From Octopus sinensis (lineage: Eukaryota), in assembly GCF_006345805.1 (NCBI RefSeq), contig NC_043000.1, positions 41,540,001 through 41,604,000 on the forward strand: a DNA stretch of 64,000 bases, in the 5' to 3' direction. Made by a program: the position numbers and the translations under genes. Positions within the stretch are counted from its first letter, which is position 1; every line of letters begins with the position of its first letter. The notes beneath the pieces were generated by a model. It ran no database searches, had not been told where the DNA came from, and saw nothing but the letters and a program-made list of their open reading frames with translations. This document shows, in pieces, positions 12,318 to 53,880 of this stretch.

Positions 12318-12975
12318 GAAGGCAGCGAGCTGACAGAAACGTTAGCACCCGGGCGAAATGCTTAGCGCAATGCTTAGAGATCAAATTTCACCGAGGTCGA
12401 CTTTGTCTTTCATCCTTTCGGGATCGATAAATTAAGTACCTATTTCTTTATTACCCACAAGGGGCTAAACATAGAGGGGACAAACAAGGACAGACATAGG
12501 TATTAAGTCGATTACATCGACCCCAGTGCGTAACTGGTACTTAATTTATCGACCCCGAAAGGATGAAAGGCAAAGTCGACCTCGGCGGAATTTGAACTCA
12601 GAACGTAGCGGCAGACGAAATACCTATTTCTTTATTACCCACAAGGGGCTAAACACAGAGCGGACAAACAAGGACAGACATAGGTATTAAGTCGATTACA
12701 TCGACCCCAGTGCGTAACTGGTACTTAATTTATCGACCCCGAAAGGATGAAAGGCAAAGTCGACCTCGGCGGAATTTGAACTCCCAACGTAACGCAGACG
12801 AAATACCGCTAAGCATTTCGCCCGGCGTGCTAACGTTTCTGCCAGCTCACCGGGGTCGATAAATTAAGTACCGGTTACGTAATGGGGTCGATGTAATCGA
12901 TTTGATCTCTTTGTCTATTCTTGTTTGTCCCCTCTATGTTTAGCCCCTTGTGGGCAATAAAGAAATAAGAATCGC
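12318..12975. mobile_element. Nested SINE family B composite: a + copy interrupted by two tandem - copies (12441-12851)
   Basis: tcgataaattaagtacc is duplicated at 12424-12440 and 12856-12872 around the insert. The head lies upstream and the tail downstream. Confidence 0.9.
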
Positions 12976-15218: not shown

Positions 15219-15379
15219 CCGTGGCGTTAAGTTGGTAAAATGAGAAGCTGCAAAAGAATGCTTTCGATTAAACGCTTACGTATTTTCAAAAGATTTCCAC
15301 AGGGCCACGAAACTGGATTTCATTAAGAGCATCATTACTTGCATTGTAATAACGTTCAACAAATATTAAGTAGAGCACT

Positions 15380-15782
15380 ACAAAAAAAAAAAAAAGAAAA
15401 AAGAAAGAGAATAATAAATGCGCATGAGTACTTCTTTTTGTTTTGTTGTTAACCAGAAAGTTTTGTTACTGATGTGACAATGGAAATAGCCTGAAACACT
15501 GAAGACGCCTTTCGGATTTCATGAGCCATTATGATTAAAAAAACAAAAAAAAACAAAAATAAAAAAAAGAGTGAGATAAATTGGGAAGGTTAGCTGAGGA
15601 CCTAATGAAGCTGAGGCAGAATGCAAGACGGAGAGGAGTAGCTATTTGGATTGGTTGATGGGTACATACATACATACATACATACATACATACATACATA
15701 CATACACACACACAGATTCACACACGCTCACATACATGCATGTTTGTGTGTTTTTATACTTTAAAGGAGAAAGCGATAGACG

Positions 15783-15842
<60 letters not shown>

Positions 15843-15864
15843 TGTAGGTAGGTAGGTAGGTAGG

Positions 15865-15943
<79 letters not shown>

Positions 15944-16866
15944 TAGAAAGAGAGAGAGAAGAGAGAGAGAGAGAGCGTGCGAGAGAGGGCAGAGAGAGAG
16001 TGGTTACGAAAAGAAAAGGAGAATTTAGAAGGGAAACAAACGAGAAATGGAGTGTTTAAGCCTAGAATGGTGATACATGTGGTGACTAGTTTCACCTCCA
16101 ACTACGACCAAACCCGAAGGGAAAGAAATAAAGAAAAAAGTTAATAGTCGGCCGTTCGGATTTTTAAGGTCGCGTGCTTATGTGACGAGGACACGTTTCT
16201 TAATCCGATTAAAGTATTAAAAGAGACGAAAAAACGAATAAGCAAAGTAAAAAGATAAACGATGATTTAGGGAAAATTAGACACATACATACATACATAC
16301 ATACATACATACATACATCCTAAAAAATTGTAAACGTACTAAAAGCTAATTAAAATACAAAACACATACGCACAAAAAAAAAAGAGATGAAAGGAAAAAC
16401 GAAATAAGAAAATCAGAAAATAACAGGAAGATGAAAAAAGATTCACAACAAAAAAAAAAAAAAGAAAAAAGAAAGAGAATAATAAATGCGCATGAGTACT
16501 TCTTTTTGTTTTGTTGTAACCAGAAAGTTTTGTTACTGATGTGACAATGGCAATAGCCTGAAACACTGAAGACGCCTTTCGGATTTCATGAGCCATTATG
16601 ATTAAAAAAACAAAAAAAAACAAAAATAAAAAAAAGAGTGAGATAAATTGGGAAGGTTAGCTGAGGACCTAATGAAGCTGAGGCAGAATGCAAGACGGAG
16701 AGGAGTAGCTATTTGGATTGGTTGATGGGTACATACATACATACATACATACATACATACATACATACATACACACACACAGATTCACACACGCTCACAT
16801 ACATGCATGTTTGTGTGTTTTTATACTTTAAAGGAGAAAGCGATAGACGGATAGATAGATAGATAT

Positions 16867-16905
<39 letters not shown>

Positions 16906-16930
16906 TGTAGGTAGGTAGGAGGTAGGTAGG

Positions 16931-17008
<78 letters not shown>

Positions 17009-17530
17009 TAGAAAGAGAGAGAGAGAGAGAGAGAGAGCGTGCGAGAGAGGGCAGAGAGTGGTTACGAAAAGAAAAGGAGAATTTAGAAGGGAAACAAACG
17101 AGAAATGGAGTGTTTAAGCCTAGAATGGTGATACATGTGGTGACTAGTTTCACCTCCAACTACGACCAAACCCGAAGGGAAAGAAATAAAGAAAAAAGTT
17201 AATAGTCGGCCGTTCGGATTTTTAAGGTCGCGTGCTTATGTGACGAGGACACGTTTCTTAATCCGATTAAGTATTAAAAGAGACGAAAAAACGAATAAGC
17301 AAAGTAAAAAGATAAACGATGATTAGGGAAAATTAGACACATACATACATACATACTACATACATACATACATCCTAAAAAATTGTAAACGTACTAAAAG
17401 CTAATTAAAATACAAAACACATACGCACAAAAAAAAAAGAGATGAAAGGAAAAACGAAATAAGAAAATCAGAAAATAACAGGAAGATGAAAAAAGATTCA
17501 CAACAAAAAAAAAAAAAGAAAAAGAAAAAA
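15380..17530. repeat. Near-identical tandem duplication, ~1.06 kb unit x2
   Basis: 15380-16447 is repeated at 16448-~17520. Differences are mostly microsatellite length and 1-nt indels. Confidence 0.95.
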
Positions 17531-17595
17531 GAAAAATGGACAAAAAAACTGTTAGAAAGAAATTAGAACTGTAAAACTTCATTCTACCATGATTA

Positions 17596-17829: not shown

Positions 17830-18670
17830 TGCCAAACTTTTTTCAGGGTTCCTTTCATCAAGCAATCTTACTTATTTTTTCCTGCAACTTCTGTTGTAAT
17901 TACATGGAATTGATTGTGTAGTCCCTTGATGTGTAATTCTTCTTCATGTCCTTTTTGTACTTCTTCCTTTCTTTTTCTTCTGCTTTCAATATTCCTTCAT
18001 TCCAAACTGATACAAGCAAGGTTTCCTTTCGATACACACGCAGTCTTCCACACTTCCTCCACTTGCTCTCTTCATATATAGGCGATCAGTGTCTGCAAGT
18101 GGATGATGGTCTCCATGCATCGTTAGGAGCTTGCTTGATTTCCTGTCCATCTCCTTTAACGCCTCCTTTGTCCACTTCAGGATTCCAGCGACATATGTGT
18201 TTATTGCCGAAATTATGTTTCTGGCATTTTTTCACTCGCCGCAGGTACTCTCTTTTTGTCTTTTCCTTCATGTCGCGGTGTTTGATTCTATCTGTCTCAA
18301 GTATTTCCAGGTATTTATAACTGAATTGAGTTTGTAATACCTTCATCTTTTTACCACTTGGCAACCATATGTCTTTTGTCCTAACAAACTTTCCTCGTCT
18401 CATCACCATCGTAGCACATTTTGTGAGTCCAAACTTCATCATAATATCATTGAAGAAAATCCGCACAGACAAGACTAGGCTGTCCAGTTCTGCCTGAGTT
18501 TTTGTGAATAGTTTCAGGTCGTCCATGAATAGTAAGTGGTTTAGTTTTCCCTTACCTCTTCCCAGGATCATACACCAACTTTGTTTTCTGTAGTATTTCA
18601 CTCAAAGGGGTCATTCCCAGCATGAATATCAGTGGAGACAGACACTGTCCCTCCGGAAGATTCTTCTCTT
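17830..18670 (-). mobile_element. R4/Dong-like non-LTR retrotransposon RT fragment
   Basis: LNHLLFMDDLKLF..MKFGLTKCA..YKYLEILE..MKEKTKREYLRRVKK, followed by frameshifted remnants. Bounded by (TTA)n at 18673. Confidence 0.85.
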
Positions 18671-18698
18671 GATTATTATTATTATTATTATTATTATT

Positions 18699-20338
18699 AC
18701 TTTTTTCTTCTTTCAAATTTGCTTCCATTTCTTGCCGAGTGTCTTCCCGACTCCTAGGGTAAAGAAACTCATAGTATACATTGGTAGGCCATTAAACCAA
18801 ACTCAATAGTTCGTTCATTTTTTTTTTTTTTTGTTAAGTTAACTTAAAATACATGAGCAGCAACAGTTCTCACATCGACAATGGTCTTCTCAATACGTGT
18901 GATGTACCAGTTAAGACAATCTTTTGCACTTCTTGCAGGGATGGTAAGCCAGGGATCATTCTCATATAATTTTCGGTTCCCTTCTTGATCATTCCTAGTG
19001 CTCCTACGATCACTGGTATTGTAACCGCCTTGAGATGCCACATTTTTTCAATTTCAATGAGCAGGTCTTTATATTTTCTGAGCTTGCCAAACTCTTTCGC
19101 TGAGATAGTATGATCACAGGGGATGCTCATGTCGATCAATAAGCAAACTTTATTGTTTTGGTCTTTCACAACAATATCTGGTTTATTGGCCTTGATGGTT
19201 CGGTCTGTATGTACTGTAAAGTCCCACGGAATGGTTACATTTTCTCCTTCAGTTACAGCCTCAGGGTGTTGATTATACCACTTGTCGGCAGTTTTGATAT
19301 TGTAATGCCGACTTATTAGCCAGTGTAGATATTGGCCAACTCTGTCATGTCTTAATTTATACTCCACTGGTGCTAAGACTTTACATCCAGAGATTAGGTG
19401 GTCCACTGTTTCAATCATGTCGTTGCAGAATCGGCATTTTGGGTCTGCTCCATTTTTCATCACATTAGCCTGGTAGTTCCGGGTTAATAGGCTTTGATCT
19501 TGAGCAGCCAGGATGAAACCTTCGCTCTCTGCTTTTAGCCCTGAGCTCCGTAGCCTCTGATGGGTTTGCTTCTGGTCAACATCAGATTGTTTGCTGCGGG
19601 TCACATATTTGCCGTGCAGAGGTTTCTCCTCCCACCTATCAGCCAATTGCTCGTGCGCTTTTTTCGTTGCCATTATTTTCACCTTCTTTGCAACAATAGT
19701 TGCCGTACTTCCCTCGGGTTGTTCAGTTTGTGTATCCTGCACGAGATCAATAGCAAATTTTTTGCTTTCCTTTATGATAGAATGAAGCTTCTTTCGTCTC
19801 TCGTGATTTTCCACGAGCTTTAGCATCCAGTCATTCGATATTTCGAGATATTTGGCCAGTCCAATTGTGGTTGTTTTGTAAGCTAGTTCAAATTGGATCA
19901 GGCCTCGACCTCCTTGGGCTCTGGGAAGGTAAAGGCGATCTACGTCTGCCTTTGGTTGGTGCATCCTATTACAACTCAGTAGCTTGCGTATTTTCTATCT
20001 ATATTCTTTACTTCACTCATATTCCAGTTCAAACATTGTAGCTATAAGTAACAACTGGAACTGCTAAGGAATTTATAGCTAACACCTTGTTACGTGCATT
20101 TAGTTCAGATTTCAGGACTGCACGCACTCTCCTATAACATTCCTTCCTGATTTTCTCTTTCATGCTTGCATGCTGAATACCAGAGCCTTCATTTATCCCT
20201 AAATATTTGTATGTTTGTTCTTGCTCAAGCTCTCTTATGACTGTGTCAACATCTAACACGACTGAATTTATGGTCTTCACTTTCCCTTTCTGGAAAGTGG
20301 CCTTGGCACACTTCTCAAGTCCAAACTCCATCCCGATG

Positions 20339-20340
<2 letters not shown>
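18699..20340 (-). mobile_element. 5'-truncated R4/Dong-like LINE (RT C-terminus, CCHC finger, REL endonuclease, 3' UTR)
   Basis: GMEFGLEKCA..YKYLG; ORF 18870-19964 with CRFC..ETVDHLISGC..RHD, DFTVHTDRTIKANKPDIV, K..KYKDL and VIVGALG. (TTA)n on both sides. Confidence 0.93.
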
Positions 20341-20394
<54 letters not shown>

Positions 20395-20399
20395 GATAC

Positions 20400-20630
20400 C
20401 ATTAACATTATTATGCGGTTGGTAGAATCGGTAACACACCGGACAAAGTGGTTAGTGGCATATCGTCCGTTTTTAGTTTCTGACTTCAAGTTCCACTGAG
20501 GTCAACTTTGCTTTTCATAATTCCGGGATCGATAGAATAAATACCAGCTGGGAGTCGATGTAACTGACTAGTCCCTCTCCACAAAATTTCAGGTCTTGTG
20601 CATAAAGTAGAAAGGATTGTTATTATTATT
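20400..20630 (+). mobile_element. SINE family B-related
   Basis: ggcggt..gtagaatcg..gaggtcaactttgcttttcat..gtcgatgtaactgactagt..aaatttcaggtcttgtgc. Confidence 0.75.
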
Positions 20631-35797: not shown

Positions 35798-36356
35798 TAT
35801 GCCCTGATGCAGTACCAGGCAATGGCTCTCATGGCTTCTGATCTTAACTGATTGGAAATGTTATCATGTACATTGTTTTGTCTTGGTATAAAAGATGGGC
35901 TACAGCAAATATTCTGCTCAATACCACAGATTTGCTTGTCACTTGTTTGACCTTAACCAGTTGAGCATGTACCTTAGTGGCTGACGATATGTGCATCTCT
36001 GATCACGAGCAGAAGTAGTGGGGGAGCATCATAGCCATGTGTTGAGAGGGATTCTTTGGGGTTTGAATAATTCACCTCTGGAAACATGGGTGGTTCTTTC
36101 AACATCCTTAAACAACCCTTATTCAGGGACCGTTTGAGCGGGATGGGCTACTCAACTTGAAGAAAATTCTAACTGGGCCCCACCTGCAAGGTCATGTGCT
36201 GTTTATCTTGATATGAGATCACCATGTCGCGCACATATGGTTGTGATGCATGTGCCTGGTGAGCCCTTATTAGACGGGTAGTCATGATGGGTATATTGGG
36301 CTTCGTATATTTTACCCCAGTGTCACTTTGATGGCATGAACTGCTCTCTCACTCAA
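35798..36356 (+). mobile_element. ~560 bp non-coding (AAT)n-tailed retro-element, family D
   Basis: Starts atgccctgatgcagtacc and ends ctctctcactc(aat)n; at least 5 copies in the window. Confidence 0.88.
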
Positions 36357-36387: not shown

Positions 36388-36448
<61 letters not shown>

Positions 36449-36449
36449 A

Positions 36450-37190
36450 ATGAAGAGAAACCCTTGCATAGCCAATTTTGGAGAGCCACTGAAGACTATG
36501 TGGAACTAAATCCTGGGCTTGGTTACAAAAGGGGCAACTAAAAAAGAAACAGAAATCCTAATTGTAGCAGCCTAAGATCAAGCGATAAAAACAAACAACT
36601 TGAGAAAAGATATTGATGGAGAGAATGTGTTAGTTCCCCAATTTGGCACAGGAAGAATATAAGAAACGGAGACACGACCAGGTTGTAAATGTTTTACACT
36701 GGAAGCTGTGCCAGAAATTCGGATTTGAAGCTGGAAACGCATGGTACAATCACGGTGTCGAAGGGGTACTGGAGTCGGAAAGATGTAGGATTTTGTTTGA
36801 CTTTCCTGTTCAAACGGATAAGTAAGTCAACCCACCATGCCCGTTTTATTCCAGGATCGCAAAGAAAAAGAACGAAAAAAATAAACGATCCCTTAAAATT
36901 TGAAATAGGAAGAATTTGGAGCAAGAGAGCAGTAAAGGTCGTGTCAATAATAATTGGCGCGTTGGGAACAGTAAGCGGAGATATAGACAAATAGCTGAAG
37001 GAGTTTGGAATAGAATGCCCAGTAGATTTCCTACAGAAAGTTTGCCTCTTAGGGTCATCAAGGGTTACCAGGAGTATTCTAAGCACTTGAAAGACAGTTA
37101 AAACTTCTGGATTCCTAAGGTAACAGGTAGTAAACCGCTACCCACATAAATCCAACAAAGAATAAGACCAAACCTGGGCCAAATCAAAAT
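36450..37190 (+). mobile_element. R4/Dong-like LINE 3' relic
   Basis: WLQKGQLKKETE..LIVAA*DQAIKTN; LAQEEYKKRRHDQV..WYNH..ILFDFPVQTD; VSIIIGALGTVS. Preceded by (AAT)/(GAA)n and ends in (AAT)n. Confidence 0.85.
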
Positions 37191-37435: not shown

Positions 37436-37516
<81 letters not shown>

Positions 37517-37526
37517 AATAATAATA

Positions 37527-38090
37527 AATGCCCTAATGTAGTACCAGACAGTGGCTCTCATGGCTTCTGATCTTAACTGATTGGAAGTGTTATCATGTAC
37601 ATTGTTTTGTCTTTGTATAAAAGATGGGCTACAGCAAATATTCTGCTCAATACCAAAGATTTGCTTGTCAGTTGTTTGACCTTAACCAGTTGAGCATGTC
37701 TCTTAGTGGCTGACGATATGTGCATCTCTGATCACGAGCAGAAGTAATGGAGGAACATCATAGATGTGTGTTGAAAGGCACTCTTAGAGGTTTGGATAAT
37801 TCACTTATGGAAGGAAACATGGGTGGTTCGTTCAACATCCTTAAACAATCCTTATTCAGGGACCTTTTGAGCAGGATGGGCTACTGGAGCTGAAGAACAT
37901 TCTAACTGGGCCCCACCTGCAAGGTCATGCGCTGTTTATCTTGATATGAGATCACCATATCGCGCATATATGATTGTGATGCATGTGCCTGGTGTACCCT
38001 TACCAGACAGGTAGTCATGATGGGTATACTAGGCTTCATATATTATACCCCAGTGTCACTTTGATGGCATGCACTGCTTTTTCACTCAAT
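37527..38090 (+). mobile_element. Family D element
   Basis: atgccctaatgtagtacc...ttcactc(aat)n, after an (AAT)/(GAT)n tract. Confidence 0.88.
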
Positions 38091-41420: not shown

Positions 41421-41633
41421 CACTCCTTAAATGAAAGGTACCGTCCTTTTTTTTGCTTTGTTATCTTCCTATACTATTTATACTTCTCTTCTTTCTTGTA
41501 TACCGTGTATACCTACTCCCTTGTCTATATCATTTCATTAAATGTAAACCTCAACACATTATACCTGTCTTTGCATTATCCTCTCATCTTTCGCTCTGGT
41601 TGCACATAAAAGAAATCATCATCATCATCATCA

Positions 41634-41682
<49 letters not shown>

Positions 41683-41685
41683 CAT

Positions 41686-42213
41686 TGAGTGAAAGAGCAG
41701 CGCATGCCATCAAAACGACACTGGGGTAAATTATACGAAGCCCAGTATACCCATCTTGACTATCTGTCTAATAAGAGTACACCAGGCACGTGCATCACAA
41801 TCATGTGCACGCGACATGGTGATCTCATATCAAGATAAAAGCGCATGAACTTGTAGGTGGGGCCCAGTTAGAATTTTCTTCAGCTCGAGTAGCCCATCCC
41901 ACTCAAAAGGTCCCTGAATAAGAGTTGTTTCCAGAGGTGAATTATTCAAACTCCATAGTATTCCTCTCAGCACATGGCTATGATGCTTTCCCACTACTTC
42001 TGCTCGTGATCAGAGATGCACATATCGTCAATCACTAAGGTACATGCTCAACTGGTTAAGGTCAAACAAGTGACAAGCAAATCTGTTGTATCGAGCAGAA
42101 TATTTGCTGTAGCCCATCTTTTATACTAAGACAAAACAATGTACATGATACATTTCCAGTCAGTTAAGATCAGAAGCCACGAGAGCCACTGTCTGGTACT
42201 GCATCAGGGCATT
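41686..42213 (-). mobile_element. Family D element
   Basis: Reverse complement of the copy at 35798; the 5' end ..ggtactgcatcagggcat abuts (TTA)n. Confidence 0.9.
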
Positions 42214-42239
42214 TTTATTATTATTATTATTATTATTAT

Positions 42240-42772
42240 TGAGTGAGAGAGCAGTTCATGCCATCAAAGTGACACTGGGGTAAAATATACGAAGCCCAAT
42301 ATACCCATCATGACTACCCGTCTGATAAAGGTACACCAGGCACATGCATCACATCCATATGTGCGCGACATGGTGATCTCATATCAAGATAAACAGCACA
42401 TGACCTTGCAGGTGGGGCCCAGTTAGAATTTTATTCAGGTTGAGTAACCCATCCCGCTCAAAAGGTCCCTGAATAAGGATTGTTTAAGGACGTTGAACGA
42501 AACACCTATGTTTCCAGAGGTGAATTATTCAAACCCCAAAGAATCCTTCTCAACACATGGCTATGATGCTCCCCCACTACTTCTGCTCGTGATCAGAGAT
42601 GCACATATCGTCAGCCACTAAGGGACATGCTCAACTGGTTAAGGTCAAACAACTGACAAGCAAATCTGTGGTATTGAGCAGAATATTTGCTGTAGCCCAT
42701 CTTTTATACCAAGACAAAACAATGTACATGATAACACTTCCAATCAGTTAAGATCAGAAGCCATGAGAGCCA
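42240..42772 (-). mobile_element. Family D element (young), 5' end replaced by a tandem array
   Basis: ttgagtgagagagcag...cagttaagatcagaagccatgagagcc. Confidence 0.92.
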
Positions 42773-43276
42773 TTATCAGAAGTCATGAGAGCCAAGATCA
42801 GAAGCCATGAGAGCCAAGATCAGAAGCCATGAGAGCCAAGATCAGAAGCCATGAGTGCCAAGATCAGAAGCCATGAGAGCCAAGTTCAGAAGCCATGAGA
42901 GCCATTATCAGAAGCCATGAGAGCCAAGATCAGAAGCCATGAGAGCCAAGATCAGAAGCCATGAGAGCCAGATCAGAAGCCATGAGAGCCAAGATCAGAA
43001 GCCATGAGAGCCAAGATCAGAAGCCATGAGAGCCAAGATCAGAAGCCATGAGAGCCAAGATCAGAAGCCATGAGAGCCAAGACCAGAAGCCATGAGAGCC
43101 ATGATCAAAAGCCATAAGAGCCATTAGATCAGAAGCCATGAGAGCCAAGATCAGAAGCCATGAGAGCCATTAGATCAGAAGCCATGAGAGCCATTATCAG
43201 AAGCCATGAGAGCCAGATCAGAAGCCATGAGAGCCAAGATCAGAAGCCATGAGAGCCAGATCAGAAGCCATGGCCT
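42750..43276. repeat. ~24 copies of a 21-24 bp unit, gatcagaagccatgagagcc+linker
   Basis: The unit equals the 5'-proximal segment of family D; junction bases vary (aa, a, att, at, atta). Confidence 0.95.
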
Positions 43277-43348
43277 TTTTATTATTATTATTATATTATT
43301 ATATTATTATATTATATTATTATTATATTATTATTATTATTATTATTA

Positions 43349-43418
<70 letters not shown>

Positions 43419-43427
43419 TATGGGTTT

Positions 43428-43496
43428 TTCTTCTTCTTTCAAATTTGCTTCCATTTCTTGCCGAGTGTCTTCCCGACTCCTAGGGCAAAGAAACTC
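43428..43496 (-). mobile_element. 69-bp 3'-tail-only copy of the 18699 LINE inside (TTA)n
   Basis: ttcttctttcaaatttgcttccatttcttgccgagtgtcttcccgactcctagggcaaagaaactc is nearly identical to 18704-18770. Confidence 0.9.
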
Positions 43497-44057
43497 ATTA
43501 TTATTATTATTATTATTATTATCATTATTATTATTATTATTATTAAGGCACTGTGTCGGCTGAATCGTTTGCAGGAGCAACGTCCCTTCCAAGAAACGTG
43601 GCGGCAACAAAAACAGCAGCAACGAGAAACACAACAGCAGCAACATGACTAACCAAAATAACAAAACTGCCACGGGGTTACCTCAGAATTAAACAGTCAT
43701 AGCAGCACTCTTACTACAAAAACCAATACCATCACCCCACTACCACTACCAGCGCTTTTACTACAATAGCAGACAGTTCGGCCTTTTTGACGAAAACCAG
43801 AACTTCCCCTGCAGCAGACAGATCCATCACTGCTGAGGGTAACAGCAGCAATATCGAAGATAGTAAAGTGCGTTGCCATGTCATGTGACCAACAGGACCC
43901 TTTGCTAAGGTTTCTTGAATCACGGAAGGACTTTTGCTGCAGAGGGAAGTAACTAAAGAGGCAAAACTAACCATTAGGGGAAATGAAAGAAAAGTTAACC
44001 CAGCGCAACCCAGCTATATCATCAAGCAAGAAATTAAAAGATATAAAATGACTTACC

Positions 44058-47608: not shown

Positions 47609-47643
47609 GTAATAATGATAATAATAATAATAAAATGATAATA

Positions 47644-47678
<35 letters not shown>

Positions 47679-48179
47679 AATTATAATAATAACAATAATG
47701 ATAATAATAATAATAATGCTTTTGTTTTGATTAAATTCTTGTTTGTTTTGTTTGTATTATCTCCTGTGCCCCCTTTTCCTTGCATCCCACCCACCTTGTT
47801 TTCTTACTGGCGACACACTTCAACATTTGCTGAAGATAATTTATGTACGTCTGCTCGTCTGCCGGCCATCAAGATTGAGTGAATGTACTGTGTGTTTGCT
47901 TGCTTGTTTGAAGAGCGATCGATAAGAAAGCGCGGGTTTATATTATATTAGACCAAGTGTTCTCAACCATTTTTTTTTATCAATGGACCTCTTTGATTAC
48001 TACTTTAATCTGGTGGGCACCTATTGCCATTCGATACTTAAAAAAGTAGTTTCATAGAAACTTCTTTCAAAATTCCAATCTTGTTTTTCACACATTAACT
48101 TGTGTAGGTAAAACTATGTAAAGTTTTAGAGAAAGAAACTTAACTATTTCTTGCAATACATACCAATACATACATAGGC

Positions 48180-52060: not shown

Positions 52061-52124
<64 letters not shown>

Positions 52125-52125
<1 letters not shown>

Positions 52126-53470
52126 TGGTCAATTACTGAAATATGTCAGCTCGACAGAAAAATAAGAAAACTGTTGACAATGCATAGAATGCACCACCCT
52201 AAGGCAGATACAGAACGACTTTATCTGCCATGAAAAGAGGGAGGCTGTGGTCTTTTGCAACTGGCAATAACAATGAAGATTGCTACAATTGGCCTAGACA
52301 CCTACCTGAAAAAGTCTGAGGACTGGATGTTAAAACTTGTCTCAAAACATGAAAACAAGAAAGCATCATACTCAGTAACAAAACAGGCAAAGGAATATCT
52401 AAGTGAATTCCGAATACAACAAATTTCAGAATTAGAGATAGACATACAAGAAACAAGCACAGAAAAAGCTAGGCGCATGAAAACCCGTGCCAAAACTGCG
52501 GCCTTAGATATTCTGAATAATAAATGGCAAGAAAAACCTCTCTATAGCAAATACCCAAAGAGAACGAATAATGCAGATATTGACAAAGCCCTGACCCATC
52601 AATGGCTAATGGCCTCTGGCTTAAAATCTGAAACAGAAGGGTTTATCATAGCAGCTCAAGAAACTACCAGGCCAACATATTAAAGAATGGCAGTAGCCCA
52701 ACATGTCGTGTATGTCGACAACAAAATCAAACCATTGATCATGTTGTCTCCAAATGCAGTCTTCTAGCGCCAACAGAGTACCTCAACAGGCATGATAGAG
52801 CTGCACAATATATTCACTGGGTAATTTGCAACAACCTGGATTTGCCCCATGAAAAAACTGGTGGGAACACAATCCACCTCCAGTGCTTGAAAATGACCAC
52901 ATCTCACTCCTCTGGAACTTCCCCATTCAAACTGACAGAAAGATAGATGCAAATAGGCCAGACATCATATTGAAAGACTTCAGACAAAGAACATGCCTCC
53001 TCATTGATATGACTGTCCCAATCGATATAAACGTATCTGTCAAGACCTACCAAAAACTGAGCAAATATAAAGATCTTGAAATAGAAATCAGCAAAATGTG
53101 GAACCTGAAGACTAAAACAATACCTGTTGTCATAGGTGCCCTGGGAATGATAGCGAAAGGGGCTGATTGCTACCTAACTCAGATACCAGGAAACCCCAAA
53201 ATGGCAGAAATTCAAAAGATAGTGCTCATTGGAACTGCTCATATCCTACGCAAAATACTCTCTATGTAATCCCAAGGTTTAAAACAATTTTAAAAAAATT
53301 TATGTATTAGACATTCACTAGTACAACACAAAAAAAAACCCGAATATATGGCACACTAGGCATAACAACAACGTGAACTTCCAACCTGTTGTCTCTTGAG
53401 GTCTCTGGGTGAGACTTGGAGCCAACTTGTACAGACATAAAGCAAAAGTCAAACATAGAATAATAATAAT
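52125..53470 (+). mobile_element. 5'-truncated R4/Dong-like LINE (post-RT region, CCHC finger, REL, 3' UTR)
   Basis: RKIRKLLTMHRMHHPKADTERLYLP*..GLKSETEGFIIAAQ..CRVC..TIDHVVSKC..RHD..WNFPIQTDRKIDANRPDII..KYKDL..PVVIGALG..ILRKILSM*. (AAT)n on both sides. Confidence 0.92.
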
Positions 53471-53474
53471 AATA

Positions 53475-53880
53475 TATTGATGCAATACCTGGCTGTGTTC
53501 TCATGACTTCAGATCTTAACTGATTGGAAGTGTTATCTTGTACATGGGGGTGAAAGATGGGCTACAACAAGTATTCTGCTCAATGTCACAGATTTTCTTG
53601 TCAGTTGCTTGACCTTAACTGTTTGAGTATGTTCCTTAGTGGCTGACAATTTGTGCATCTCTGATAGTGGAGTAGCAGCTTCGCCATGTGTTGAAAGGAA
53701 TTCCGTGGGGCTTGAATAATTCACCTCTGGAAACATCGGTGTTTTACTCATCAGCCTTAAATAATTCTTATTCAGAGACCTTTTGAGTGGGATGAGCCTC
53801 ACCTGCAAGGTCATGCGCTGTTTATTTTGATATGGGATCACCATGTCGGGTGATCACTGCTCTCTCCCACTCAATAATTC
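53475..53880 (+). mobile_element. Family D element, old and internally deleted
   Basis: gatgcaatacctggc..gatcttaactgattggaagtgttatc...ctctctcccactcaataat. Confidence 0.8.

What the first reader, a model, noticed from the sequence alone, without database searches (positions are those of the whole stretch)
42750..43276. 22-bp array that looks like reiterative, telomerase-like reverse transcription
The + strand here equals the cDNA of the family D copy at 42240. At the normal near-5' sequence ..ttAAGATCAGAAGCCATGAGAGCCATTgcctgg the copy stops and the segment repeats ~24 times. Junctions differ (cc|aagatc, cc|agatc, ccat|gatc, ccatt|atc, ccatt|agatc) but use only bases present at the template borders, as expected from repeated stop-and-re-prime events rather than DNA slippage, which copies one junction. 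The stop lies at the 3' foot of a predicted 5' hairpin (GCCCUG..CAGGC). The array then ends directly in (TTA)n.
Basis: partly seen in the sequence, partly recalled or inferred. Interest (0 to 1): 0.8.

Follow-up and report, generated by a model that had tools for sequence, protein, structure and literature searches.

The report
Minisatellite at a retroelement's 5′ end
A 22-base piece near the start of a small octopus jumping gene has been copied about 24 times in a row exactly where that gene joins its insertion site; an error by the element's own reverse transcriptase could explain this, but one locus cannot separate that from ordinary DNA repeat expansion.

Summary
The array is real: 23.7 units of 22 bp at 42750-43275. 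It is built from the segment that lies 25-47 nt from the 5′ end of a ~555-nt non-autonomous retroelement ("family D", sense on the minus strand). Family D inserts into (TAA)n, as the Dong/R4-like LINEs in this octopus window do.

Three findings favour one burst of sloppy re-copying at or before integration:
- Junction variation is real and concentrated (16 edits in 115 junction bases against 4 in 391 core bases, p=4e-8).
- All core variants are singletons, at the same rate (1.0%) as the copy's private substitutions (1.1%).
- The array replaces the canonical 25-nt terminus and ends 5 bp from the (TTA)n.

- The "hairpin" is no more stable than shuffled sequence and is broken in 2 of 4 other copies.
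- Overrun and re-entry compensate to keep a 22-nt register (18/23 junctions, p=2e-5), so stops and re-primes are not independent.
- There is no alignment pairing, and the obvious TT microhomology is never used.
- "ATT" could also come from the adjacent microsatellite.
- R2-type RTs are reported to jump only from template 5′ ends.

No other D copy with an array could be retrieved. Verdict: a TE-derived minisatellite; RT origin plausible (~0.4), unproven.

The parts
41636..41686 (-). (TAA)n tail / target microsatellite downstream of family D copy 1
   Evidence: TRF; flank listing
41687..42212 (-). Family D copy 1. It has a full-length 5' end (…CATCAGGGCAT) and a 32-bp internal deletion. It is followed on the + strand by TTTT (42213-42216).
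   Evidence: blastn; alignment A1; sequence
42217..42240 (-). (TAA)n 3' tail of family D copy 2, the priming side of target-primed reverse transcription
42241..42749 (-). Body of family D copy 2. It is 96.6% identical to the copy at 35821-36354 and has 6 private substitutions in 534 compared sites.
42750..43275 (-). 22-bp array: 23 full units plus a last partial unit CAGAAGCCATG-GCC (43262-43275). The unit is AAGATCAGAAGCCATGAGAGCC on the + strand, which is nt ~25-47 of the element's RNA.
43276..43280 (.). T5 run between the array and the (ATT)n. A similar T4 run follows the intact 5' end of copy 1.
43281..43418 (-). (TAA)n tail of the upstream LINE fragment; the microsatellite into which copy 2 inserted
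43419..43496 (-). 78-bp 5'-truncated 3' end of a Dong/R4-like LINE. It matches window 18700-18790 and locus L001 at 95%.
43497..43545 (-). (TAA)n upstream of the LINE fragment; probably the tail of a further SINE at >43546
35799..36354 (+). Comparator: intact family D copy with a single 22-nt segment and the canonical 5' end ATGCCCTGATGCAGTACCAGGCAAT
37552..38087 (+). Comparator: family D copy with a single 22-nt segment; the hairpin arm reads CCAGAC
53474..53880 (+). Comparator: internally deleted family D copy, inserted directly behind the (TAA)n tail of a + strand Dong-like LINE
18700..20340 (-). 5'-truncated Dong/R4-like LINE, the likely kind of partner enzyme. Its ORF carries a CCHC motif and a PD..D..K restriction-like endonuclease motif after the RT. 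Its (TAA)n tail is at 18672-18699.

Best explanation
The array is a transposon-derived minisatellite that already existed when this copy's 5' junction was made. Family D is a ~555-nt non-coding, non-autonomous retroelement with its sense on the minus strand here. It inserts in one orientation into (TAA)n microsatellites, the target and tail type of the Dong/R4-like LINEs that lie in the same window.

Proposed sequence of events. While copy 2 was being made, the first-strand cDNA (the + strand, growing left to right) reached the segment 25-47 nt from the RNA 5' end. A polymerase without proofreading, most economically the LINE reverse transcriptase finishing the first strand or copying it into the second strand, then slipped back about one unit some 23 times. 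Usually it slipped at ...GAGAGCC. Sometimes it slipped after 2-3 further bases (AT, ATT) and skipped the same number of bases on re-entry. Synthesis finally ended at or near the same ...GCC boundary and was joined through a short T run to the (TTA)n target. The canonical 25-nt 5' terminus is therefore missing. After that the array stayed static and picked up only singleton mutations.

Shown: the anatomy, the orientation, the concentration of variation at junctions, the register-keeping, the star-like singleton pattern, and the equal age of array and copy.

Inferred: that the polymerase was the reverse transcriptase, and that the burst happened in this insertion event.

It resembles reiterative reverse transcription only loosely. 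There is no alignment pairing and no credible structural stop.
For: - The array occupies the extreme 5' end of a target-primed insertion and replaces the canonical terminus. Its last unit stops at the usual ...GCC boundary and is followed by T5. The neighbouring intact copy 1 has T4 at its own 5' junction.
- Variation is concentrated at junctions: 16 edits in 115 nt against 4 in 391 nt in cores, Fisher p = 4e-8. The heterogeneity was therefore made by the array-forming process, not by later mutation.
- All 4 core variants are singletons. Their rate (1.0%) equals copy 2's private substitution rate (6 of 534, 1.1%), which indicates one burst as old as the copy and no later homogenisation.
- There is no significant higher-order repeat.
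- ATT and ATG junctions retain terminal mismatches, as expected from a polymerase without proofreading (inference).
- R2-superfamily reverse transcriptases template-jump serially (PMC8594491).
- Telomerase-like reiteration has been proposed for the I factor and for L1 at 3' ends (PMC3415434).
- Dong elements target (TAA)n (PMC3812793), and a full-length Dong exists in octopus (PMC9115989).
Against: - This is a single locus. The 4 other family D copies in the window have one unit each, and no outside copy could be retrieved.
- Register-keeping (18 of 23 junctions, p = 2e-5) is what slippage on an already repeated template predicts. It is not expected on a single-copy RNA unless a fixed-distance ruler is invoked.
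- No complementarity exists between the product end and the re-entry site, and the TT microhomology product is absent (sequence).
- The hairpin is not significant and not conserved.
- B. mori R2 RT is reported to jump only from the template 5' end and to engage templates at or 1 nt inside their 3' end, not at internal sites (PMC8594491).
- The last 12 bases CATGGCCTTTTT resemble copy 1's CAGGGCATTTTT (10 of 12). The true terminus may therefore be retained and the missing ~25 nt may be a later deletion.
- Family D shares no 3' sequence with either LINE in the window, so the partner enzyme is inferred only from the shared target.
Confidence: 0.4

Rival explanations
1. Post-insertion DNA-level expansion. 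Copy 2 inserted with one unit, either full-length or 5'-truncated at ...GCC next to (ATT)n. A chance 22-bp duplication was then expanded by replication slippage, repair synthesis or unequal sister-chromatid exchange beside an unstable AT-rich microsatellite. ATT-type junctions are fossils of synthesis that ran a few bases into the right flank and slipped back in register. The 25-bp terminus was lost by a deletion of the same kind.
For: - Register-keeping in 18 of 23 junctions is the hallmark of slip-back on a repeated template.
- If the flank was (ATT)n, the overrun ATTAT realigns on AAGAT with a matched 3' AT, which makes the ATT|ATC junction easy even for ordinary polymerases (sequence).
- Non-major junctions cluster in the third of the array nearest the microsatellite: 7 of 9 against 4 of 14, p = 0.036, a post hoc comparison.
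- The window is extremely rich in slippage-prone repeats, with 103 TRF rows.
- Tandem repeats derived from parts of SINEs and other transposons are well documented and usually ascribed to DNA-level events (PMC10702118).
Against: - A process active enough to build 24 units should leave shared core variants or homogenised blocks. Instead all core variants are singletons, at the same density as the copy's private substitutions.
- At least four junction types need several new non-homologous breakpoints.
- It needs an extra coincidence: a deletion that removes the terminus and ends 5 bp from the microsatellite.
- This is the only long array with a 10-60 bp unit in 64 kb, yet it sits exactly at a retroelement 5' junction.
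Confidence: 0.3
2. Inherited array. A source ('master') family D element already carried a long 22-bp array, however it was formed. Copy 2 is an ordinary 5'-truncated retrocopy whose reverse transcription stopped inside that array.
For: - It explains simply why the array runs up to the 5' junction and why the terminus is missing.
- 5' truncation is common among the (TAA)n-targeted insertions in this window.
- The singleton pattern then reflects only decay since insertion.
Against: - The closest relative in the window (96.6% identical) has a single unit.
- No array-bearing sibling is available.
- It only moves the question of how the heterogeneous junctions arose to another locus.
Confidence: 0.2
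3. Serial end-to-end template jumping over short RNA fragments. The RT reached the 5' end of a truncated family D RNA and then copied, one after another, ~19-25-nt RNA fragments of the same region. R2-type enzymes do this in vitro with small RNAs.
For: - Unit lengths of 21-24 nt fall in the small-RNA size range.
Against: - Defined by their own start and end points, successive units would be 19, 22 and 25 nt long, with a long unit always followed by a short one. Independent templates do not predict this.
- No non-templated bases are seen at junctions.
- There is no evidence that such an RNA fragment exists (Rfam scans empty).
Confidence: 0.05
4. Assembly or consensus artefact. The array length, or the 21-nt and 24-nt junction variants, are errors of a long-read assembly.
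For: The CC|AGATC variant is a 1-base loss in an AA dinucleotide, a typical long-read error class.
Against: - ATT-for-AAG double substitutions and the 2-base insertions are not typical read errors.
- The flanking family D body is as clean as the other copies.
- This cannot be tested without reads.
Confidence: 0.05

Closest known systems
Tandem repeats and satellites derived from parts of SINEs and other retrotransposons (e.g. SINE-derived satellites of squamates, PMC10702118; retrotransposon-derived arrays in plants, PMC7004042)
   Same: A short internal piece of an interspersed retroelement is amplified head to tail. The array is continuous and in phase with the parent element.
   Different: - Here the array sits at the very 5' junction of one insertion and replaces the terminus.
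- It has several junction types and no homogenisation.
- The published cases are attributed to unequal recombination or double insertion, and many loci were available for them.
Reiterative (telomerase-like) synthesis at the 3' end of non-LTR elements: I factor (TAA)n (Chaboissier et al. 2000, cited in PMC3415434) and L1/Alu A-tail expansion (PMC3415434)
   Same: The element's own reverse transcriptase dissociates and re-anneals during target-primed reverse transcription. This produces tandem copies of a short template stretch.
   Different: - Those events occur at initiation, on 1-3-nt units, and product and template remain complementary after slippage.
- Here the unit is 22 nt and lies at the far (5') end of the template.
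- Here there is no complementarity at the re-entry site.
[quoted passage not shown]
   Same: The enzyme belongs to the same superfamily, the restriction-like-endonuclease LINEs. It synthesises continuous cDNA across discontinuous templates with little or no homology. Template jumping from the RNA 5' end to the upstream target has been proposed as how R2-type 5' junctions form (recalled, not read here).
   Different: [quoted passage not shown]
- The array would need about 23 jumps to an internal site of the same RNA, and it shows no non-templated bases.
Telomerase and the bacterial repeat-synthesising reverse transcriptases DRT2 and DRT10 (PMC12039810, PMC12632851)
   Same: A defined template segment is copied repeatedly into tandem DNA.
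   Different: - Those are dedicated systems, with RNA structure or alignment pairing that sets the template boundaries and gives precise junctions.
- Here the boundaries wobble by 0-3 nt, the flanking structure is not significant, and nothing suggests a function.
Dong / R4-clade (TAA)n-specific LINEs and their dependants (PMC3812793, PMC3774820; octopus Dong in PMC9115989)
   Same: The target and tail are (TAA)n. Insertion is orientation-specific and piles up in one microsatellite. 5' truncations are common. The LINE ORFs in the window carry an RT followed by CCHC and PD..D..K motifs.
   Different: - Family D shares no 3' UTR sequence with the two LINE lineages in the window.
- It has no recognisable 5' ribozyme and no tRNA-like head.
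- Its dependence on Dong is therefore inferred, not shown.

Membership tests
Non-autonomous retroelement mobilised by a (TAA)n-specific Dong/R4-type LINE | Insertion into (TAA)n in a fixed orientation, with a (TAA)n 3' tail | tested here: met
   All 5 family D copies are flanked by (ATT)n/(AAT)n on both sides. They are co-oriented with the adjacent LINE in 2 of 2 cases.
Non-autonomous retroelement mobilised by a (TAA)n-specific Dong/R4-type LINE | Precise 3' end and variable or truncated 5' end | tested here: met
   The 3' end ...CTGCTCTCTCACTC(AAT)n is found in all copies. The 5' ends differ: 0-5 extra A/T, a ~6-nt truncation in the 53880 copy, and the array in copy 2.
Non-autonomous retroelement mobilised by a (TAA)n-specific Dong/R4-type LINE | 3' sequence shared with the partner LINE | tested here: not met
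   Local alignment of family D against both LINE 3' UTRs scores no better than shuffles.
Non-autonomous retroelement mobilised by a (TAA)n-specific Dong/R4-type LINE | Partner LINE of the restriction-like-endonuclease type present in the genome | tested here: met
   The ORF at 18870-19964 has C-x2-C...H-x4-C and KPD...D...K motifs after an RT fragment. Pfam hits are weak (zf-RVT, RVT_1). Homologues carry RVT_1. A Dong element in octopus is reported in PMC9115989. No phylogenetic placement was done.
SINE in the strict sense (Pol III head) | tRNA-, 5S- or 7SL-derived 5' region | tested here: not met
   ARAGORN finds no tRNA in the window. Rfam finds nothing near threshold in family D.
Telomerase-like reiterative reverse transcription | The product 3' end can re-pair with an alignment region 3' of the template | tested here: not met
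   The cDNA end ...ATGAGAGCC matches the required ...CAATCAGTT at only 2 internal positions, with at most 1 nt (A) of terminal overlap. The TT-guided product CCATT|AAGATC occurs 0 times in 5.
Telomerase-like reiterative reverse transcription | A template boundary element that stops synthesis | tested here: not met
   The hairpin folds at -4.6 kcal/mol, z = -0.46. It is absent from larger folds, and its arm is mutated in 2 of 4 copies.
Telomerase-like reiterative reverse transcription | Recurrence: independent arrays of the same segment at other copies | tested here: inconclusive
   0 of 4 other copies in the window carry an array. No octopus sequence outside the window could be reached.
R2-type end-to-end template jumping | The jump starts at the 5' end of the donor template | tested here: inconclusive
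   The array and the insertion end at the same ...GCC boundary, which fits a truncated RNA. But ATT and AT overruns show that the template extended further.
R2-type end-to-end template jumping | The jump lands on an acceptor 3' end, often with non-templated bases | tested here: not met
   Re-entry is at an internal site of the same sequence, and all junction bases are templated. The published enzyme behaviour is in PMC8594491.
Minisatellite grown by DNA slippage or unequal exchange | Head-to-tail units of 10-60 bp kept in register | tested here: met
   Period 22, 23.7 copies, and 18 of 23 junctions in register.
Minisatellite grown by DNA slippage or unequal exchange | One founding junction, with variants spread to neighbours or into higher-order blocks | tested here: not met
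   There are at least 4 junction types. Core variants are all singletons. The lag-2 excess has p = 0.10, or 0.55 after correction.
Minisatellite grown by DNA slippage or unequal exchange | Length polymorphism between alleles | not testable with these tools
   No reads, haplotypes or other individuals are available.

The most novel reading that the evidence does not exclude
A Dong/R4-type LINE reverse transcriptase, on reaching the 5'-proximal part of a non-autonomous RNA during target-primed reverse transcription, can re-copy a ~22-nt stretch tens of times with a nearly fixed stride. One retrotransposition event would then create a minisatellite. This would be an RNA-templated route from interspersed repeat to tandem repeat, and a eukaryotic counterpart of the repeat-synthesising bacterial reverse transcriptases.
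Probability: 0.3. Interest if true: 0.7.

Novelty: new member of a known kind. Interest (0 to 1): 0.35.

Why it matters
How interspersed repeats seed minisatellites and satellites is still argued mostly from DNA-level models. A demonstrated case in which a LINE reverse transcriptase builds a 24-unit array in one insertion would add an RNA-templated route. It would also bear on how 5' tandem monomers of some LINEs arise, and on what R2-superfamily enzymes, now used for genome writing, do at template 5' ends. As it stands, the locus is a well-characterised single example with suggestive features: junction-restricted heterogeneity, burst then stasis, and a position at the 5' junction. It also defines a cheap test, a census of family D copies in any octopus assembly.

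Tried and rejected
**Searches for more family D copies (all failed)**
- An exact-pattern scan of JGI metagenome contigs gave two chance 20-mers and no family D homology.
- GTDB genome contigs and IMG/VR gave 0 hits with a body pattern and with a two-unit array pattern.
- A protein search with the 50-aa family D ORF hit only UniProt O. bimaculoides gene models. These have no contig on record.
- A search with a peptide from the abundant SINE found only one Argonauta hians model, and its 20-kb locus has no family D.
- The window's own LINE ORF is not on record.
- The only near-identical LINE hit is a 2-kb sewage contig.
- A 71%-identical LINE hit lies on a 2.3-Mb ENA contig that shares no DNA with the window.
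- Full-text searches for the unit and for a body 22-mer found 0 papers.

**Ideas rejected**
- Higher-order repeat structure: lag-2 recurrence of rare junctions is not significant.
- A tRNA-like head, an HDV-like ribozyme or a miRNA in family D or the array: nothing near threshold.
- Derivation of family D from the LINE UTRs in the window: no similarity.
- Inverted repeats or structure around the array: none relevant.
- The opposite orientation of family D, with the array near a 3' end. It was rejected because the LINE tails fix (TAA)n as the sense-strand tail, and because the end next to GAGTGAGAGAGCAG is precise while the other end is ragged.
- A rolling circle on a small template: it predicts a single junction type.
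Full report
**What is there.** The window is AT-rich (37% GC) and microsatellite-rich eukaryotic DNA. It comes from an octopus. A 50-aa ORF of the element in question matches only Octopus bimaculoides gene models, at 85-96% identity. A peptide from the window's commonest SINE matches only Argonauta hians.

At 42750-43272, Tandem Repeats Finder reports 23.7 copies of AAGATCAGAAGCCATGAGAGCC (92% matches, score 898). The 19-mer core occurs 26 times in the window against 0 expected. Splitting on the 17-nt core gives 23 junctions:

| Junction | Count | Units |
|---|---|---|
| AAGAT | 12 | |
| AAGTT | 1 | 6 |
| AAGAC | 1 | 15 |
| ATTAT | 3 | 1, 7, 20 |
| AGAT | 3 | 10, 21, 23 |
| ATTAGAT | 2 | 17, 19 |
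| ATGAT | 1 | 16 |

**The element and its orientation.** The array continues, in phase, a ~555-bp repeat ("family D"). The window holds five copies: 41687-42212, 42241-43275 (the copy with the array), 35799-36354, 37552-38087 and 53474-53880. Every copy is flanked by (ATT)n/(AAT)n on both sides.

The window also holds fragments of two LINE lineages. Their ORFs have an RT piece followed by a C-x2-C...H-x4-C motif and a KPD...D...K restriction-like endonuclease motif. These LINEs end in (TAA)n on their sense strand (18700-20340 on the minus strand; ~52123-53458 on the plus strand). Dong elements of the R4 clade are the known (TAA)n-specific LINEs, and one is known from a snail (PMC3812793). A full-length Dong is reported for O. 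bimaculoides (PMC9115989).

Three observations fix the sense of family D. One end (...CTGCTCTCTCACTC, then (AAT)n) is identical in all copies, while the other end is ragged. Family D lies in the same orientation as the adjacent LINE in both cases where they touch (43419-43496 and 53230-53880).

Family D has no tRNA-like head and no Rfam match. It has no similarity to either LINE 3' UTR. Its dependence on a Dong-type enzyme therefore rests on target, tail and orientation only.

**The local nest.** Read on the minus strand, the order is:
- (TAA)n, 43545-43497
- a 78-bp 5'-truncated LINE 3' end, 43496-43419
- the LINE fragment's (TAA)n tail, 43418-43281
- AAAAA
- the array and the body of copy 2
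- (TAA)n, 42240-42217
- AAAA
- copy 1
- (TAA)n, 41686-41636

The (TTA)n into which the array runs is therefore the tail of a LINE fragment. The array does not touch it directly: a partial unit CAGAAGCCATG-GCC and five T lie between. The canonical 25-nt 5' terminus (ATTGCCTGGTACTGCATCAGGGCAT on the + strand) is missing.

**What the array's internal structure says.**
1. Variation is concentrated at junctions: 16 edits in 115 junction bases against 4 in 391 core bases (Fisher p = 4e-8). The junction heterogeneity was therefore produced by whatever built the array, not by later mutation.
2. The four core substitutions are all singletons. Their density (1.0%) equals the density of substitutions private to copy 2's body (6 of 534, 1.1%). 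The array is about as old as the copy, was made in a burst, and has not been homogenised since.
3. Rare junction types recur at lag 2 (units 17/19 and 21/23), but this is not significant (p = 0.10 for that lag, 0.55 over lags 1-8).
4. Non-major junctions are commoner in the third nearest the 5' junction: 7 of 9 against 4 of 14 (p = 0.036, a post hoc comparison).
5. Donor and acceptor points are coupled. Synthesis that runs 2-3 bases past ...GCC (AT, ATT) re-enters 2-3 bases late in 4 of 6 cases. A late re-entry of 2 or more bases never follows a normal stop (0 of 17; Fisher p = 0.0017). As a result 18 of 23 units are exactly 22 nt (permutation p = 2e-5).

Free "stop and re-prime" on a single-copy RNA does not predict point 5. 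Slip-back along an already repeated template does, and so would an enzyme that recoils by a fixed distance.

There is no telomerase-type alignment. The product end ...ATGAGAGCC matches ...CAATCAGTT, the sequence that precedes the re-entry point, at only two internal positions. The one microhomology on offer (TT) would give CCATT|AAGATC, which is never seen.

The proposed stop signal is not supported:
- The hairpin folds at -4.6 kcal/mol, no better than shuffles (z = -0.46).
- It is not part of the minimum-free-energy fold of the 57-nt or 106-nt 5' region.
- One arm is CCAGAC instead of CCAGGC in two of the four other copies.

The claim that junctions use "only bases present at the template borders" is true but not diagnostic. 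ATT is also the unit of the adjacent microsatellite. An overrun ATTAT would even realign on AAGAT with a matched AT end. ATG is a single substitution from AAG.

Finally, the best-studied relative, B. mori R2 RT, does jump serially between templates. However, it is reported to jump only when it reaches the 5' end of its template, and an enzyme paused mid-template does not jump (PMC8594491).

**What still favours an origin linked to retrotransposition.**
- Position. This is the only long array with a 10-60 bp unit in 64 kb, and it lies exactly at the 5' junction of a target-primed insertion.
- The burst-then-stasis pattern fits a one-off event better than a locus that is unstable at the DNA level.
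- Mismatched overruns were retained, which suggests a polymerase without proofreading.
- The last unit ends at the usual ...GCC boundary before a T run like the one at copy 1's intact 5' junction.

That last point is ambiguous. CATGGCCTTTTT also resembles copy 1's CAGGGCATTTTT (10 of 12 bases). The true terminus might therefore be retained, and the ~25 nt between might have been deleted later.

**Weighing.**

| Explanation | Probability |
|---|---|
| RT-made array, in this event or in the immediately preceding source lineage | ~0.4 |
| Post-insertion DNA-level expansion beside the (ATT)n tract | ~0.3 |
| Ordinary 5' truncation inside an array inherited from a master copy | ~0.2 |
| Serial jumping over small RNA fragments | ~0.05 |
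| Assembly artefact | ~0.05 |

The decisive test is a census of family D copies in an octopus assembly. It could not be run here. Neither the DNA-pattern scans of the three contig collections nor the protein-based look-ups retrieved any family D copy from outside the window.

**Comparison with known systems.** As an object, this is a new member of a known kind: a tandem repeat derived from part of a retroelement (PMC10702118). As a mechanism, the nearest precedents are the following.
- Reiterative synthesis at the 3' ends of the I factor and of L1/Alu (PMC3415434).
- R2 template jumping (PMC8594491).
- More remotely, telomerase and the bacterial DRT2 and DRT10 enzymes (listed).

The locus fails the defining features of the telomerase-like class that could be tested: alignment pairing and a boundary element. 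It also fails the landing rule of R2-type jumps. It likewise fails the single-founding-junction expectation of simple DNA slippage. It is best described as a burst of register-keeping, sloppy slip-back by an unidentified polymerase. No function is suggested.

Noticed in passing
window 15376-17538: A ~1.1-kb segment is tandemly duplicated (15376-16488 and 16444-17538, 97.8% identical). The duplication carries its own (GATA)n, (AG)n and (TACA)n microsatellites in both copies.
   Followed up: partly
window 12437-12807: A 184-bp unit of the window's most abundant SINE is present as a perfect-phase dimer (2.0 copies, 96% matches).
   Followed up: no
window 18086-20440: 5'-truncated Dong-like LINE pieces are piled head to tail in one (TAA)n. 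A 1.64-kb copy (20340-18700, minus strand) has its tail at 18672-18699. It is followed directly by another RT-bearing piece (18671-18086) that has no nucleotide similarity to the first lineage.
   Followed up: partly
window 53536-53853 (minus strand) and UniProt A0A0L8G4R8, A0A0L8GKS7, A0A0L8FGT8 and others: Internal deletions in one family D copy fuse three short ORFs into a 106-aa ORF. Several 'uncharacterized proteins' of O. bimaculoides in UniProt are translations of family D and are probably spurious gene models.
   Followed up: partly
window 36419-36456, 37470-37527, 41620-41640, 47632-47700: (TAA)n tails are repeatedly bordered by long (CTT)n or (GAT)n runs. This suggests that the Dong target microsatellites mutate into, or sit next to, other trinucleotide repeats.
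   Followed up: no
locus L001 (ENA ERZ22666216, 1983 bp): A contig from an ENA metagenome assembly whose record name suggests Italian sewage is 96.5% identical to the window's LINE. It also contains the same 3' end and (TAA)n tail. It is presumably octopus DNA in a metagenome.
   Followed up: no
window 42213-42216 and 43276-43280: Two neighbouring family D insertions both have a run of 4-5 T (A in the sense strand) between the element's 5' end and the (ATT)n. The other three copies have 0-2. This could be non-templated addition by the RT or a 5' extension of the source transcript.
   Followed up: partly
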